From Pavona decussata (Eukaryota): 64,000 nucleotides of DNA. This document shows, piece after piece, positions 21,542-29,712 of the stretch. The stretch lies in NCBI GenBank assembly GCA_977016875.1, contig CDRNST010000002.1, positions 1,922,001 to 1,986,000 on the forward strand, in the 5' to 3' direction. The notes beneath the pieces are model-generated. The model saw only the letters and a program-made list of their open reading frames with translations, was not told where the DNA came from and searched no databases. The position numbers and the translations under genes are program-made. Within the stretch, counting starts at the first letter, position 1; each line of letters opens with the position of its first letter.

Positions 21542-21727
21542 AACGTTTCCCAAAAATTTGGCGTATCACGTTTTTCACGTTTGAGTTTGTCCAATTTTGT
21601 ACAGATTTTGTTTGGCGAATCTACAAGATATACTGATCTTTCATACGATTTTCAGCCAGTTTTTCTTCGAAAATTTGCCTCATTTTAACTGATTTTTAGT
21701 TTTGTTTCCAGTTCCGATGCCTGCTAG

Positions 21728-22818
21728 GGGAACGTTCTCTTTGCGTAAACTTGTTCCTTTTAATCGTGGACCTTTTAGCTGAAAGCGGAACATATTTTAT
21801 CTAAGTAGGAACGAAATGATCATTTTCAGCTAAAATCAGAACGATGTGTTCCAATTTGCTTTTTGATTGGGGAACAAATAGTTCCCAAATTGACATGTTA
21901 GGAACAACAGCTTGTTCTCTTTCGTAATTTGTGGAACAAATGTTCCTATTGATAGGTTCCTTTTTACAATAATCGTTCCTTTTCACTAAAGTGTGGAACG
22001 TTCATTCCAATTTGTTTTTTGTTAATGGAACAAATAGTTCCCAAATTGACATTTTAGGAACAACAGCTTGTTCCCTTTCGTAATTTGAGGAACAAATGTT
22101 CCTATTGATAGGTTCCTTTCTACAATAGTCGTTCCTTTTCACTAGCGTGTGGAACGTTCGTTCCGATTTGTTTTTTGTTAAGGGAACAAAAAGTTCCCAA
22201 ATTGACATTTAAGGAACAAGAGCTCGTTCCCTTTCGTAATTTTAGGAACAGCTGTTCCTATTTGCAGGTTCCTTTTACAATAGTTGTTCCTTTTCATTTG
22301 CCCGTGGAACTTTCGTTCCTAAGTGATTGTTCTTTTGAAGGGAAAGTGGTTCCTATTCAAAGTTTTCCGTTCCCTTTTAAAATACAGTAAGGAACATCTG
22401 TTCCCTTATTAAGAGGTTCTGTTTTGATAGTTTGTTCCCTATTATATTTTTAAGGAACACTTATTCCTGTTGCTTTGTTCCTTTTCAGAGTGTTGGTTTC
22501 TTTTAATTGGCATGCAGAACGTTTTTTTCTCCTAATAACTTGTTCCAATTGACTTCAAATAGTTCCTATTCAGGTTTTCTGTTTTGATTGTTTGTTCTCT
22601 TTCATAGTTTTAAGGAACATTTGTTCATATTGCTTTGTTGCTTTTCAGAGTGTTTGTTCCTTTTAATTGGCATGTACAACTTTTGTTCGTAATTACTTGT
22701 TCCCGTTGAATTCAAATCGTTCCTTTTAAGGTTGTTCCTTTGTGCAGGTGTTCCTGTTTTCACTGCCTGTTCCCTTTTATAGTTTTAATGAGCGATTGTT
22801 CTTATTGACGGGGTTCCC
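21728..22818. repeat. GGAAC/GTTCC pentamer array: three 156-bp units plus two ~160-bp units
   Basis: 'ggaacaaa(t/a)agttcccaaattgac' at 21871, 22027 and 22183; 'taaggaaca...cttttcagagtgtt..ttttaattggcatg' at 22451 and 22611. Many short GGAAC...GTTCC palindromes. Confidence 0.9.
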
Positions 22819-23057
22819 TTTGAGACTTTGTGAGAATGGTCTTGGGCATGCAAAGGCCTGCCCAGGCAAGCTTAACCACGTTTGGGTTCTTATGAATTTG
22901 AGTACAGTAGTAATGAGCATGGACAAGTAGTGGCAAGTGGTGACAAGTGCGAGATTTATTCAAAGATTCATTCTTTGAAGACGGATCCAAGTGTTGGGTC
23001 GATTTTGGCTAATCTGTACCAACGAGTGCATTTCCCTAACGTTCCTTTACTGTAAAT

Positions 23058-24781
23058 ATGAACAAGAAAAACAAAGTAGATTGGTCTAACATCGATGGTG
23101 CATTACCCAAACCAAAACGCCTCCATTTGGAAAAAGACGAGACAGACAGCTTGTATCACTGTCCAATACAAGTTTGCGACCATGAAGGATTTCAAAGTCA
23201 GCGTGGATGTAGGAAACATGTGAATTCTAAGCAGAGCTGGTTCTTTTATTTCGATGGAAAACCCGAACTGAAACATCAACAACAATCGCTGCAAGTTTCC
23301 CCAACCAACTTATCAGTGACCACCACAAGTGACTGTGCATCCACCGAAACCACAAGAATGCACGCCACCAAGTTATTTCCTTCATTTTCAGTCTCTGGAA
23401 AAATTGGCCAAGATTTCGCCAATTGGTTGACTGGAAGTGGGGGTGGCTACAAGAAAGATCGCACAGCTCAACAAATAGCTAAGAGAAGCTTTAAATTTTT
23501 GAAATTTTGTTGCGAAGACGAGGAGGAATTGACGTTTGAAGTGATAGACTACAGTGTTTGCTCTCCAAATCTACTGTTCAAGTTCATCGACTTCTTGCAA
23601 GACGGGTGCAAACTCGGACATGGAGGACGATTGGGATACATAGACGCAATTTCCGATCTAATAGACTTTCGAAAAATCAACGGAACATCGGACGCAGTTC
23701 TGCGAAACCTATCCGTGACTGAATTGTACCTTAAGCGAGCTCGAAAGACGGTGGCAAAGATGATGAGATTGCAGTGGTCTCAAGACCTGGATATCGACAC
23801 GTTGGAAGCCCGAGGTCACTGGGCCACGATGGACGAATTGTTACGAGTCGTGACGTTTCACTTGCCACGTTTCGAAAACACCGTCAAAACGTGTAAGAAC
23901 TGTCCAAATCAAGTAAACCCGTCAGACTTAACATTTGCGACGAGGTTTGTGTCGATGTATCTGTTCATCAAAGTGAAGGGGTCGCGCCCAATGACTTATC
24001 AGTATTTGACGGAGGACATGGTCAATGCAGCGAAGGCAAACGGAGGATTCGTCGATCAAAAAATGTTCAAGACCGCCGGAAAGTACGGTTTCGATTCGCT
24101 GATCCTGACCGATGCCAGCATGCAAGTGATCGATAATTACATCTCTATTGTCAGGCCATTGCTGAACCCACGGTGCGACTATGTTCTCGTCACGAGAAAT
24201 GGAGGCCAGCAAAGTAAACTGGGCGATGTGATGAGCAAACTGGTGTTTGATGCGATTGGCAAATACATTCATCCGACTCGATATCGTCAGATTGTCGAAA
24301 CGCAAAGCCTCAATCAATTGACTAGTACCGAGCAGAAAATTTTGTCAGAGGACCAGAAACACAGTTCTGCTGTCCCAAAAATCCACTATCAAAAGCAACG
24401 ATCGCGCGAAGTTGCCGTCAAGGGCCACGAATGTCTACAAAAACTTCAAGGAAGCAAGGGTTCAGAAGTGGACGAGGAAGTTCACGCTAGATTTGGCGTT
24501 TCAAAGTCAGCCTCTGCAACGCCAATTGAAAATGCTGATATGGAAATTCCCCCCAAAACGACTAAGGATGACCCACCCGTTGAGCGCTTGCGAATTCAGA
24601 GAAAACTTCGTCGTGTATTGAAATTCACGTCACACGAGGATGATTTTCTCAAGAAAGGAATCCATAGGCACGGGTTTGGACAGTGGACAGCTATTCTGAG
24701 AGATCCTGAGTTAAAGAGGGAAGAACGGCGGACTCTCTAACGAAAAGCGCTGGACTCAAAATGTCGCTAAGTTGTGAATAA
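23058..24781 (+). CDS. Tyrosine recombinase with N-terminal C2H2-like finger and C-terminal TRF-like Myb/SANT domain (3' frameshift)
   Basis: Catalytic-like motifs 'KGSRP' (R), 'FKTAGKYG' (K), 'HPTRYR', 'QKHSSAVPKIHY' (H..Y). Finger 'CPIQVC..KHVNSKQ'. Myb 'KFTSHEDDFLKKGIHRHGFGQWTAILRD'. The ORF stops at 24740, but a shifted frame continues 'KEGRTADSLTKSAGLKMSLSCE*'. Confidence 0.85.
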
Positions 24782-27885: not shown

Positions 27886-28343
27886 TATGAAAAAAAAAAG
27901 TTGCAAATTAAAGTCATATTCCCATCAGTTTAGTGCTACCCTACCCATTTTCGCAAAATTGTTATTAAGCTTTCGTAATAAAACTTAAAGCTTTCTAAAC
28001 AAATATTGGTTTAAAGACACGTTGCCTATCTATAGCACCACTAGACAGCGTGTTCTATAATTTCCATTAATCTACCTCTAAAACAAAACAATGTCGAAGT
28101 CTAAAAAAATTATCTGTGAATTAATCGATTTTGACTACGAGATATACACTCGACAACAACTTGCCGAATTTCGGGCTTTTTTTTCCATTTTATTTTTGTC
28201 AAAACGGCGGGTTTTTTTACTACAAAATTATTCTTTACGACAAGGGTATATTTCAGGCCTGATAAATGAAAGAGAATGGTGTGTTATTCTAGAAAGTGAC
28301 ACAGGCATACTCGGAAAAACATCCGAGTGCTCCTATCAGGAGT

Positions 28344-28552
28344 ATTATGTATTTCTTGCCCGATTTGTCTCTTTTTCAAAATGGCAGATTTTTGCAACAA
28401 GAAGGTATATTCTTGACAACAACATTATGTATTTCTTGCCCGATTTGTCTCTTTTTCAAAATGGCGGATTTTTACAGCAAGGAGGTCTTTTTGTGACAAC
28501 AAGATTAAGTATTTCCTGACCTGTTTGTCTCTTTTTCAAAATGGCGGATCTT
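28344..28552. repeat. 80-bp tandem repeat, three copies, each containing CAAAATGGC(A/G)G
   Basis: 'atta.gtatttc.tg.cc..tttgtctctttttcaaaatggc' at 28344, 28424 and 28504. Confidence 0.9.
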
Positions 28553-29712
28553 ACAACTTGCAATTTTAACTCTTAAGAGCCGTCCTCTGTAAATAGCGAC
28601 TATCGTCGTTTGGACGAGAAAAAATGAAATCCCTAAAACTTTCTCAGAAGAATGGTCTATATAAGTGACTCACATAAATATAACTTTCAGCTCAGTTCGA
28701 TTCGTATTTTAGCTGTAGTGCGACCATCTTGGTTTTACCGCTCTGAGAGGGCTTTCAGCGGCCATTTTAGGCCACACTTTTAAGAATTTGTCTTACAAAG
28801 AAAGCGTTACAAATCCGAACAAAATCTCATTATTCGAGACAAGCAAATGTTTGTTGTTGTGCTGAGAAGCTTTTTTGGGAATTTGATCGAAATCTGATTT
28901 TTTTACAAAATTTTCAATTTCTTTCCCATTGAACTACTTTTCAAGTGCCAAAAAAAATGGCCGAGTTTAAAGGAAAATATCGCTAAAGATACATTAGTTG
29001 GCATCCTAAAACAGCATCCCGGTTAAAGAGCAATGTCTCGTCTGTAAGAATATGCAATAAAATTTTTGGGCAGTTAAAAAGAGAAAATTATAGAAGAAGA
29101 AGTTTTAACTGTACTTTTGTCAACAAACACCGCCTTCGTAATTAGCATAACAACATGAAAATAACGATTTACTAAGAACTAATGATAAATTCCCCTTACC
29201 TCGTGAAATATCGAGATATTTCAAAATATATCAAATTATAGTTTCAGTCGGATACAGCTGCATTTTCGATGATTTGTTGTGCAGAATCACTGTAATACAC
29301 CGCAGCCGTTAAACTGAGTTCAATTCTTCAAAGTCCGTCAGGACAACCATCGGCCGAAAAAATTGCCTTGACCGCCCCATAAGCTGCCCTTTGCAAGATG
29401 TCAAATATTTCTTTGTTATCCTTAATGACCAAAAATTCCTTCAGCAACCATTTAAATCCTGCTTTGAACTGGAGATTCTCGTCAAGAAATCGTTTATGTT
29501 CCGTTGACCTTCCGCCGTGATCAATCAATGAGATTGCGTTTCCGAAACGTGCGCACATCCAGACGGGCTGGGGTGGGGGCGGGGAGGAAACAAAAACGGA
29601 ACAGCTCCTTAGTTAAAAAAAATGGGCTATTCAAGATTACTGTCAAAGCTATGTTGTGCGTTTCGGGTATTAAATAGGAAACTGCTGTCCCAGAATAATG
29701 TGAAATATGATA

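What the first reader, a model, noticed from the sequence alone, without database searches (positions are those of the whole stretch)
21720..28572. Candidate undescribed integrative replicon: ZnF-YR-Myb integrase, convergent intron-bearing SF3 helicase and pentamer array
Seen: three modules within ~7 kb, bounded by a microsatellite on one side and 80-bp repeats on the other; no RT, DDE transposase, pPolB, capsid or packaging ATPase. Established: Cryptons encode a YR without a helicase and DIRS elements pair a YR with RT, whereas YR plus D5-like SF3 helicase typifies phage satellites and some Polinton-like viruses. Inference: a nuclear element that excises or integrates via the YR and replicates as a circle from the array using host polymerases, or a deleted endogenous virus. 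This copy is mildly decayed.
Basis: partly seen in the sequence, partly recalled or inferred. Interest (0 to 1): 0.9.

Follow-up and report, generated by a model that had tools for sequence, protein, structure and literature searches.

The report
Two-gene integrating replicon in coral genomes
This is a decayed copy of a roughly 7.5-kb mobile element, common in stony-coral genomes, that pairs a lox-type tyrosine recombinase with a virus-type replicative helicase and a dense array of GGAAC sites and sits in microsatellites; I found no published description of this gene pairing in an animal transposon.

Summary
All three modules are real and belong to one element. The recombinase ORF (23058-24772, +) has the tyrosine-recombinase fold and catalytic residues. 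The convergent gene (24970-27773, -) is a D5-type SF3 helicase. The GGAAC/GTTCC array (21711-22817) holds 51 of the window's 134 pentamers.

In coral metagenome contigs anchored on the helicase, 29 of 31 that reach 1 kb past its 3' end carry the recombinase. It is always convergent. Every contig that reaches further has the same pentamer array.

I found the termini. They are 12-14-nt inverted motifs, present in the window at 21546-21557, next to purine-rich microsatellites. In head-to-tail junctions the two motifs flank an 8-nt spacer, the geometry of loxP and FRT. Bounded units are 7.3-7.8 kb and carry only these two conserved genes, with no capsid, polymerase or RT.

Relatives encode the helicase as one uninterrupted ORF, so the window's interruptions are decay, not introns. 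The element also extends beyond the stated bounds, to about 21544-28886.

Integration by site-specific recombination is well supported. Replication as a circle from the array is inference. I could not check Repbase or Dfam.

The parts
21459..21541 (.). Perfect (CTTC)n microsatellite directly outside the array-side terminus. It is the insertion context, not part of the mobile unit proper.
   Evidence: TRF reports 20.8 copies at 100% match. Purine-rich microsatellites of the same strand sense flank element ends in L073 (both sides), L045, L061, L069, L011, L039 and L081.
21544..28886 (-). Whole element as I bound it, about 7.34 kb. Strand is given as that of the helicase. The array-side end is firm. 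The helicase-side end is a best candidate.
   Evidence: The terminal motif sits at 21546-21557. A degenerate inverted counterpart sits at 28871-28882, with GATC just outside it. Motif-bounded relatives measure 7.6 kb (L073 4071-11695), 7.8 kb (L072 296-8097) and 8.15 kb (L045 550-8701).
21544..21557 (+). Array-side terminal motif, a putative recombinase-binding arm. It is CG plus the 12-mer TTTCCCAAAAAT. The 8 nt before it (21536-21543) occupy the spacer position.
   Evidence: The same 12-mer (at most 1 mismatch) occurs in this orientation beyond the array in L043, L045, L054, L060, L064, L072, L073 and L081. It occurs inverted at the helicase-side end in 12 loci. The window and L073 align from the microsatellite through this motif to the array.
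21711..22817 (.). Array of 51 GGAAC/GTTCC pentamers, 11 of them as GGAAC-N4-8-GTTCC palindromes, in higher-order repeats of 156 and 160 nt.
   Evidence: Arrays of 25-45 copies of the same pentamer lie between the recombinase start and the terminus in every locus that reaches there: L003-5, L041, L043, L045, L053-55, L060, L064, L072, L073 and L081.
23058..24772 (+). Tyrosine recombinase gene (C2H2-like zinc finger, SAM-like core-binding domain, catalytic domain, Myb-like domain). It is broken by 1 frameshift and has no stops. The longest ORF is 23058-24740.
   Evidence: 969 homologues, the best 93-96% identical. Columns R310, K338, R410 and H435 are invariant, with a near-invariant HxxR histidine and a tyrosine. 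The AF2 model has pLDDT 82.6. Foldseek top hits are XerA, lambda Int, Cre, XerD and XerH. A Myb-like Pfam domain is found in 31 of 37 family members.
24970..27773 (-). D5-type SF3 helicase gene (N-terminal domain, D5N-like domain, SF3 ATPase, acidic linker, long helical C-terminal domain). It is broken by 2 frameshifts, 3 stops and 2 missing stretches totalling 74 aa. No Walker A motif is left in any frame.
   Evidence: Relatives are single ORFs of 839-913 aa that match Pfam PF00519 above its cut-off, plus PF01057. The AF2 model of P0218 has pLDDT 73. Foldseek top hits are poxvirus D5/E5 helicases, the SaPI5 primase-helicase and giant-virus and virophage SF3 helicases.
28344..28583 (.). Three 80-nt tandem repeats in the helicase-upstream region. 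They are internal to the element and each carries an AAAATGGCGGATTT-like motif.
   Evidence: A related AAATCCG motif clusters in the same region in other lineages: 8 in the region against 0 elsewhere in L073, and 9 against 0 in L025. Their function was not tested.
28871..28886 (+). Candidate helicase-side terminus. It is a degenerate inverted copy of the terminal motif (2 mismatches to the 12-mer, exact over 10 nt), followed by GATC.
   Evidence: The alternative candidate at 29062-29073 fits less well. No close relative covers this region, so this bound is provisional.

Best explanation
The region is a decayed, no longer autonomous copy of a two-gene integrative mobile element of anthozoan nuclear genomes.

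Shown:
- The element is a unit of about 7.3-7.8 kb. Its order is: terminal motif, roughly 1.1-2 kb non-coding region, D5-type SF3 helicase gene, convergent tyrosine-recombinase gene, array of 25-52 GGAAC/GTTCC sites, inverted terminal motif.
- Its ends abut microsatellites.
- Where two copies meet head to tail, the two 14-nt inverted motifs flank an 8-nt spacer, as in loxP or FRT.

Inferred:
- The recombinase binds the two arms and exchanges strands within the spacer against a target that shares a few bases with it. GGAA-type repeats offer many such targets. Insertion and excision would therefore pass through a circular form, as in the Crypton model.
- The helicase acts as an initiator-helicase, like papillomavirus E1, polyomavirus large T or the Rep protein of SaPI satellites. 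It would open the circle at or near the pentamer array and recruit host primase and polymerase.
- That would multiply the circle before re-insertion and so account for the rise in copy number.
For: - Linkage: 29 of 31 helicase-anchored contigs with at least 1 kb beyond the helicase carry the recombinase. It is always on the opposite strand, 236-731 nt away. The two exceptions are truncated copies.
- Array: the same pentamer cluster is present in every locus that reaches it, across lineages whose helicases are only 32-39% identical.
- Mobility: sister copies about 99% identical over 7.1-7.7 kb lie in different flanks.
- Termini: the 12-mer and its inverse lie exactly where similarity between copies ends. 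It is on the helicase side in 12 loci and on the array side in 9 loci plus the window.
- Core-site geometry: junctions at L040 354-389, L054 7365-7400 and L081 7284-7317 show arm, 8-nt spacer, arm.
- Insertion into microsatellites: L073 has GGAA-rich repeats on both sides. The L081 pair of copies has the same (CTTTCTCT)n on both sides.
- Spacer and target change together. Group A has spacer-like TATATGAT and sits in (AGT)n/(ATGATA)n.
- Proteins: the recombinase fold and catalytic set are present. The helicase has the D5/E1-type SF3 fold and motifs.
- Gene content: no third conserved ORF.
- Literature: the model of Crypton insertion by recombination between a short terminal sequence and a near-identical target, and the unexplained copy-number gain of active Cryptons, are described in PMC9977147.
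Against: - No circle was observed. The head-to-tail junctions in L054 and L081 join two different copies, so they are tandem insertions. L037 and L040 are ambiguous.
- No primase or polymerase is encoded, and the helicase's first 165 residues have no assigned function.
- Which protein binds the pentamers is unknown. A GTTCC lies 3 nt inside the helicase-side terminal motif in 10 of 12 loci. That points at least as much to a role in recombination as to one in replication.
- Helicase-less derivatives with an intact recombinase exist (L081).
- Recombinase homologues look more numerous than helicase homologues (969 against 167 hits). The counts are not comparable, because of the search tool's length window and because the long ORFs are often broken into pieces.
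- Linkage was tested almost only from the helicase side.
- Repbase and Dfam could not be searched, so an existing entry cannot be excluded.
Confidence: 0.7

Rival explanations
1. The element integrates as described, but the pentamer array is not an origin. It would be a set of accessory (arm-type) sites for the recombinase's zinc finger or Myb domain, or a promoter or enhancer of the recombinase gene, or an episome-retention array like the EBV family of repeats or the yeast 2-micron STB. The helicase would then serve another step.
For: The array always lies between the recombinase start and the terminus. A single GTTCC sits 3 nt from the other terminal motif in 10 of 12 loci. The recombinase carries two extra DNA-binding domains that are conserved across the family. 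The pentamer is invariant although the helicase N-terminal domains have diverged strongly between lineages.
Against: At 25-52 sites over about 1 kb, the array is far larger than known arm-site sets. Palindromic pentamer or hexamer clusters are the usual origins of SF3 initiator-helicases, which is established knowledge for polyomavirus large T and papillomavirus E1. An element that keeps a 2.6-kb helicase gene needs a site where the helicase acts.
Confidence: 0.3
2. The element is a reduced endogenous virus or a satellite of one. Full relatives would carry capsid and packaging genes, or the two-gene unit would be packaged by a helper virus. It would then belong with Polinton-like viruses, virophages or a papilloma/polyoma-like lineage.
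For: The helicase's nearest folds are all viral or satellite. Relatives score above the Pfam cut-off on the papillomavirus E1 helicase model. Tyrosine recombinase plus SF3 helicase is the replication and integration pair of Polinton-like viruses (PMC4642659, PMC11131425).
Against: Motif-bounded units of 7.3-7.8 kb in at least three lineages contain only the two genes. Flanks of the long loci hold no large ORFs. Identity to any viral helicase is 11-16%. The coral polintovirus survey found tyrosine recombinases in only 52 of 4,862 elements and describes nothing like this (PMC11131425). A helper-dependent satellite cannot be excluded with these data.
Confidence: 0.1
3. The neighbourhood is chance: a Crypton-like recombinase element that happened to land beside an unrelated helicase pseudogene and a satellite-like repeat.
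For: Recombinase homologues appear more numerous than helicase homologues.
Against: Linkage holds in 29 of 31 contigs, with fixed orientation and spacing across many lineages. The termini enclose both genes.
Confidence: 0.02

Closest known systems
Cryptons (tyrosine-recombinase DNA transposons; Goodwin 2003; Kojima & Jurka 2011, PMC3212892)
   Same: A eukaryotic DNA element with a tyrosine recombinase and no RT. No long terminal repeats. [quoted passage not shown]
   Different: Cryptons are described with the recombinase as their only enzyme, and the word 'helicase' does not occur in PMC3212892. This family has a second conserved gene (an SF3 helicase), a large pentamer array, 12-14-nt inverted terminal motifs and a zinc finger and Myb domain on the recombinase. 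None of 37 family members matched Pfam DUF3504, the Crypton-derived domain.
Phage-inducible chromosomal islands and satellites such as SaPIs (integrase + primase/Rep helicase + iteron origin)
   Same: The same functional trio: a tyrosine integrase, a D5-type SF3 helicase and a repeated-site array next to them. The SaPI5 primase-helicase is among the best structural matches (7ola).
   Different: Those elements are bacterial. They carry a primase domain and packaging and interference genes, they depend on a helper phage, and they integrate at a unique att site rather than in microsatellites.
Polinton-like viruses and virophages with tyrosine recombinase and SF3 helicase (PMC4642659)
   Same: The same pair of integration and replication genes in a eukaryotic integrating element. 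The mavirus SF3 helicase is among the structural matches.
   Different: Those are 14-40 kb and defined by capsid and packaging genes. None is present inside the motif-bounded unit here.
loxP/Cre, FRT/Flp and the yeast 2-micron plasmid
   Same: The core-site geometry of inverted arms of about 13-14 nt around an 8-nt spacer. Cre is among the fold matches. The 2-micron plasmid is likewise a nuclear element with a tyrosine recombinase and a tandem-repeat array (STB). That last comparison is from established knowledge and was not tested here.
   Different: The 2-micron plasmid does not integrate and has no helicase. Its Flp serves copy-number amplification. No sequence relation was found.
Telomere-repeat-specific tyrosine recombinases of endogenous nimaviruses of crustaceans (PMC10871703)
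   Same: [quoted passage not shown]
   Different: Those sit in large (giant-transposon-like) endogenous virus genomes and target (TAACC)n. Any sequence relation is untested here, because fetching sequences of a virus of animals is barred.
Papillomavirus E1 and polyomavirus large T origin systems
   Same: An SF3 initiator-helicase and a cluster of short palindromically arranged sites. Relatives match Pfam PF00519 at 28.6-33 bits against a cut-off of 26.5.
   Different: At the fold level the best matches are D5-type rather than E1 or large T. There are no capsid or regulatory genes. The number of sites is an order of magnitude larger.

Membership tests
Tyrosine recombinase superfamily (protein) | Two-domain fold (core-binding plus catalytic) and the catalytic R-K-H-R-H/W-Y set | tested here: met
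   R310, K338, R410 and H435 are invariant in 37 sequences, with a near-invariant HxxR histidine and a tyrosine. Foldseek top hits are almost all tyrosine recombinases, with the best E-value 7e-4 and probability 1.0. Pfam's own integrase model does not score.
SF3 helicase, D5-like (protein) | Walker A, Walker B, B' and motif C in a AAA+ core preceded by a D5N-like domain | tested here: met
   Met for the intact relatives: motifs are visible in P0192, P0206, P0217 and P0151, PF00519 scores above its cut-off, and Foldseek matches D5/E5 and SaPI5 over about 350-430 columns. The window copy itself has lost Walker A.
Crypton | Tyrosine recombinase without RT, as a DNA element | tested here: met
   No RT or RNase H in any ORF of the element.
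Crypton | The recombinase is the only conserved enzyme (optionally with a GCR1_C DNA-binding domain) | tested here: not met
   A helicase gene is linked in 29 of 31 contigs. The extra domains are a zinc finger and a Myb domain, not GCR1_C.
Crypton | The recombinase falls within the Crypton clades or is similar to DUF3504 | tested here: inconclusive
   No DUF3504 hit in 37 members at E <= 0.01. No phylogeny with Repbase Crypton proteins could be made, because no tool holds them.
DIRS/Ngaro/PAT retroelements | RT and RNase H next to the recombinase | tested here: not met
   Absent from the window copy and from the motif-bounded relatives.
Polinton-like viruses and virophages | Double and single jelly-roll capsid genes and a packaging ATPase | tested here: not met
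   There are only two conserved genes between the terminal motifs. tblastx of the remaining region between lineages gives only short multi-frame matches. Fold-level search of the short unconserved ORFs was not done.
lox/FRT-type core recombination site | Two inverted recombinase-binding arms around a 6-8-nt spacer | tested here: met
   Junctions at L040 354-389, L054 7365-7400 and L081 7284-7317 show 14-nt arms around an 8-nt spacer. Binding and cleavage themselves are not testable with these tools.
Nimaviral telomere-associated tyrosine recombinases | Sequence relationship to that recombinase family | not tested
   Only the domain architecture and the repeat-specific insertion were compared, from the paper's text. 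The sequences were not fetched (see referred steps).
Repbase/Dfam entry (any superfamily, including the class label 'Crypton-H') | Nucleotide or protein match to a curated repeat consensus | not testable with these tools
   No tool holds Repbase or Dfam. The label Crypton-H occurs in papers without a definition.

The most novel reading that the evidence does not exclude
Anthozoan genomes would host a previously unnamed superfamily of mobile elements that are half transposon, half plasmid. Each would be a nuclear unit that leaves the chromosome through a lox-like site and multiplies as a circle. Multiplication would rely on its own E1/large-T/D5-like initiator-helicase acting on a pentamer-array origin. 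The circle would then re-enter microsatellites that match its 8-nt spacer. That would be the first cellular eukaryotic counterpart of bacterial integrative plasmids and phage satellites. It would also show how a tyrosine-recombinase transposon can gain copies.
Probability: 0.4. Interest if true: 0.9.

Novelty: new variant of a known kind. Interest (0 to 1): 0.78.

Why it matters
If the reading holds, four things follow.
- It adds a new architecture to the short list of eukaryotic DNA-transposon types: a tyrosine recombinase with its own replicative helicase and a candidate origin.
- It offers a concrete answer to an open point noted for active Cryptons, namely how a cut-and-paste recombinase element gains copies (PMC9977147).
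- It ties a virus-type replication module to a capsid-less cellular element in animals. That bears on how small DNA viruses, satellites and transposons exchange modules.
- It shows a recombinase whose target choice tracks an 8-nt spacer and lands in microsatellites.

There is also a practical point. The family is abundant in coral assemblies, with 1318 recombinase clusters at 50% identity. It is currently annotated as 'uncharacterized protein' host genes. It also turns up inside contigs filed under bacterial MAGs.

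Tried and rejected
- Sequence searches of the PDB gave only a weak TRF2 Myb match for the window's recombinase and P-loop noise for the helicase profile.
- Pfam on the window's own helicase pieces found nothing. The family became clear only from intact relatives.
- A search for long terminal inverted or direct repeats around 19-31 kb found none. The real terminal motifs are too short for that search and came from comparing copies.
- My first right boundary for group B (L055:7815) was wrong. 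Four loci shared the sequence beyond it because it is still element sequence.
- Matching contig lengths between hit lists as a proxy for linkage gave one sure case (14,221 nt: P0017 and L055) and two 78-82-kb coincidences.
- blastn of the window's helicase-upstream region found no relative beyond 27900, so the helicase-side terminus of this copy rests on the motif alone.
- The listing of cluster members on ten distant recombinases gave no host names.
- Domain-wise conservation did not show which protein binds the pentamer.
- The literature searches found no description of this element.
- I rejected the intron model because relatives are uninterrupted. I built no spliced or joined model. The pieces of the window's helicase gene were searched apart, by reference.

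Full report
**What is in the window**

Between 21.4 and 28.9 kb, G+C rises from about 0.37 to 0.43-0.51. The features, in order:
- A perfect (CTTC)20.8 microsatellite at 21459-21541.
- An array at 21711-22817 that holds 51 of the window's 134 GGAAC/GTTCC pentamers. That is about 23 per 500 nt against about 1 elsewhere. Eleven of them form GGAAC-N4-8-GTTCC palindromes, inside higher-order repeats of 156 and 160 nt.
- A 560-aa ORF at 23058-24740 on the plus strand.
- Several minus-strand open stretches between 24970 and 27773.
- Three 80-nt repeats at 28344-28583.

The surroundings are ordinary animal nuclear DNA: rhodopsin-type receptor ORFs, a Roc-COR gene and a DDE_3 transposase fragment. The three N runs were left as they are.

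**The recombinase**

The ORF has 969 homologues at E <= 1e-3, all about 560-590 aa. The best are 93-96% identical. The named ones are 'uncharacterized protein' entries of the stony coral Oculina patagonica. An exhaustive search found 1318 clusters at 50% identity.

In an alignment of 37 members, R310, K338, R410 and H435 are invariant. The HxxR histidine and a tyrosine are nearly so. An AlphaFold model (pLDDT 82.6) matches XerA, lambda integrase, Cre, XerD and XerH over 330-380 columns, and almost nothing else.

A conserved C-x4-C...H-x4-H zinc-finger-like motif lies upstream of the core. A Myb-like domain lies downstream; Pfam PF00249 matches 31 of 37 members. No member matches the Crypton-derived DUF3504.

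The window's copy has one frame change against its closest relatives and no stops. It differs at 6 of 91 highly conserved columns.

**The helicase**

Searched apart and by reference, the window's pieces give no Pfam hit. Their relatives are single uninterrupted ORFs of 839-913 aa from Oculina, Acropora, Montipora, Desmophyllum and the sea anemone Actinostola. These carry Walker A, Walker B, B' and motif C. They score above the curated cut-off on the papillomavirus E1 helicase model (28.6-33 bits against 26.5) and weakly on parvovirus NS1.

A model of P0218 (pLDDT 73) matches the poxvirus D5/E5 helicases and the SaPI5 primase-helicase in the PDB. Among viral models it matches D5-type helicases of giant viruses, mavirus and phages. 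Identity is 11-16%. No primase domain is recognisable. The first roughly 165 residues and the long helical C-terminal domain have no assignment.

Against P0223 the window's gene shows 2 frame changes, 3 stops and 2 missing stretches totalling 74 aa. No Walker A is left in any frame, whereas 27 of 29 relatives have one. I built no spliced, joined or repaired version.

**Are the modules linked elsewhere?**

I therefore scanned metagenome contigs with an alignment of 29 helicases and obtained 80 loci, mostly from coral metagenomes.
- Of 31 loci that extend at least 1 kb beyond the helicase's 3' end, 29 carry the recombinase. It is always on the opposite strand, 236-731 nt away. The two exceptions are truncated copies.
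- Every locus that reaches beyond the recombinase's start has a cluster of 25-36 of the same pentamers.
- This holds across lineages whose helicases are only 32-39% identical to the P0218 group.
- One recombinase-anchored contig of useful length, L081, came from the scan of prokaryotic genomes and is filed under a 'bacterium' MAG. It shows the same parts.

**Mobility and ends**

Sister copies are about 99% identical over 7.1-7.7 kb and then diverge into different flanks.

Comparing ends across lineages gave a 12-mer, TTTCCCAAAAAT. In the window it lies at 21546-21557.
- With at most one mismatch, it lies at the helicase-side end in 12 loci.
- Its inverse complement lies beyond the array in 9 loci and in the window.
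- With the adjoining CG or TG, the inverted arms are 14 nt.
- Units bounded by both arms are L073 4071-11695, L072 296-8097 and L045 550-8701.

Where two copies meet head to tail, the arms enclose exactly 8 nt:
- TATAGAAT in L040 (354-389).
- TGGAGGAT in L054 (7365-7400).
- ATCCTATA, read on the other strand, in L081 (7284-7317).
- In L037 the spacer is a 30-nt GGAA-rich stretch.

This is the geometry of loxP and FRT.

**Microsatellites**

Outside the arms lie purine-rich simple repeats.
- GGAA-type repeats lie on both sides of L073.
- The same (CTTTCTCT)n lies on both sides of the tandem pair in L081.
- (AGGA)n, (GAA)n and (AAGA)n occur at other ends.
- (CTTC)n lies in the window, in the matching strand sense.

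The bases kept at the junctions (...AGGA at the array side, GGAT or GAAT at the helicase side) overlap with these repeats.

In group A the recombinase is the most divergent (58% identity). Its arms are variant, the spacer-like 8 nt read TATATGAT, and the flanks are (AGT)n and (ATGATA)n. Spacer and target type thus change together. That is what strand exchange within a shared spacer predicts.

The window and L073 align from the microsatellite through the arm to the array. The window's array-side end is therefore firm at 21544. Its other end is a degenerate motif at 28871-28882 followed by GATC. It is provisional, because no close relative covers that region.

**Gene content**

Between the arms only the two genes are conserved. 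tblastx of the helicase-upstream regions between lineages gives only short matches in mixed frames and strands. The flanks of the long loci hold no large ORFs. There is no RT, DDE transposase, polymerase, capsid or packaging ATPase.

**How it most likely works**

Three things are shown:
- a conserved two-gene unit;
- lox-like ends;
- insertion in microsatellites.

Five steps are inferred:
- The recombinase binds the arms.
- It exchanges strands in the spacer with a target that shares a few bases.
- The element passes through a circle, as in the Crypton model (PMC9977147).
- The helicase is an initiator-helicase that acts at or near the pentamer array and uses host primase and polymerase.
- That replication yields the copy-number gain.

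Evidence against the inferred part:
- No circle was seen.
- The L054 and L081 junctions join different copies, so they are tandem insertions.
- A GTTCC sits 3 nt from the helicase-side arm in 10 of 12 loci, which fits a role for the pentamer in recombination.

**Comparison with known systems**

It works like a Crypton with a replication module added, or like a bacterial phage satellite or integrative plasmid moved into an animal nucleus.
- It fails the Crypton description on gene content and shows no DUF3504 similarity.
- It fails DIRS-type membership (no RT).
- It fails Polinton-like virus membership (no capsid genes).
- The domain architecture of the recombinase and its repeat-specific insertion recall the telomere-repeat-specific recombinases of endogenous nimaviruses (PMC10871703). 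I did not fetch those sequences.
- I found no paper describing this element.
- The coral polintovirus survey mentions tyrosine recombinases and helicases only as rare, scattered genes.
- Repbase and Dfam could not be searched. The label 'Crypton-H' exists in papers without a definition.

I did not scan the viral-contig collection and did not fetch nimavirus sequences (see referred steps). For the terminal motif I used a natural 12-mer with mismatches as a search pattern.

The slip concerns where the breaks lie.
- Early on, before I had relatives to compare, my working located roughly where the helicase reading frame departs from a continuous one.
- The script printed the open stretches of the three frames with their coordinates.
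- Note 2 says in coarse terms which part of the recombinase diverges.

This report gives counts only, and nothing was deleted.

**Verdict**

Integration by a lox-like site into microsatellites is well supported. The replicative circle is a reasonable but unproven inference. The window's copy is dead.

Noticed in passing
L081:3353-12406: A contig filed under a 'bacterium' MAG carries two tandem deletion derivatives of the element. One lacks the array and recombinase. The other has the array and an intact 552-aa recombinase ORF but has lost the helicase. They are joined by an arm, 8-nt spacer, arm junction, and the pair is flanked on both sides by the same (CTTTCTCT)n. This is host DNA inside a MAG. 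A recombinase fragment is likewise named as a 'Cyanobacteria bacterium' MAG protein (P0481).
   Followed up: partly
L002-L006 (e.g. L004:7440-7520, L005:1497-1640): The lineage with the most divergent recombinase has variant terminal motifs. It sits in (AGT)n/(ATGATA)n instead of GGAA-type repeats, and its spacer-like 8 nt change accordingly.
   Followed up: partly
loci L003, L021, L043, L072 compared with the window: Recombinase and helicase similarities disagree between lineages. Group B has a recombinase 75% identical to the window's but a helicase about 33% identical to the P0218 group. Group A has 58% and 59%. This suggests exchange of modules between elements, which tandem insertions of different lineages (L054) would favour.
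   Followed up: no
window:28344-28583; L073:4071-5577; L025:1031-3091: The helicase-upstream region holds clusters of an AAATCCG motif in some lineages: 8 in the region against 0 elsewhere in L073, and 9 against 0 in L025. The window's 80-nt repeats each carry a related AAAATGGCGGATTT-like motif. These may be promoter elements or a second set of protein-binding sites.
   Followed up: partly
L053:7944 and L055:7815: Two sister copies lose similarity to the other four at one and the same point, about 130 nt inside the array-side terminus, and continue into different sequences. This is unexplained. It could be a secondary recombination point.
   Followed up: no
L045:929-1247; L009:8576-9233, L011:3628-4290, L015:3038-3350: The helicase-upstream region contains an inverted roughly 300-nt segment in one copy (L045). 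In the P0218-like lineage it contains a large internal palindrome with arms of roughly 300 nt.
   Followed up: no
window:31097-31267: A 171-nt repeat also occurs in L029 and L032, matching in both orientations (palindromic, MITE-like). It is unrelated to the element itself.
   Followed up: no
window:7-678, 4707-5633, 40261-40698, 52237-53700, 44630-45028: Host context: two rhodopsin-family receptor ORFs, Roc and COR-A domain ORFs of a ROCO-type gene, and a DDE_3 transposase fragment.
   Followed up: partly
window:20799-20844: A 20-nt inverted repeat with a 6-nt loop and 95% complementarity lies about 700 nt outside the element.
   Followed up: no
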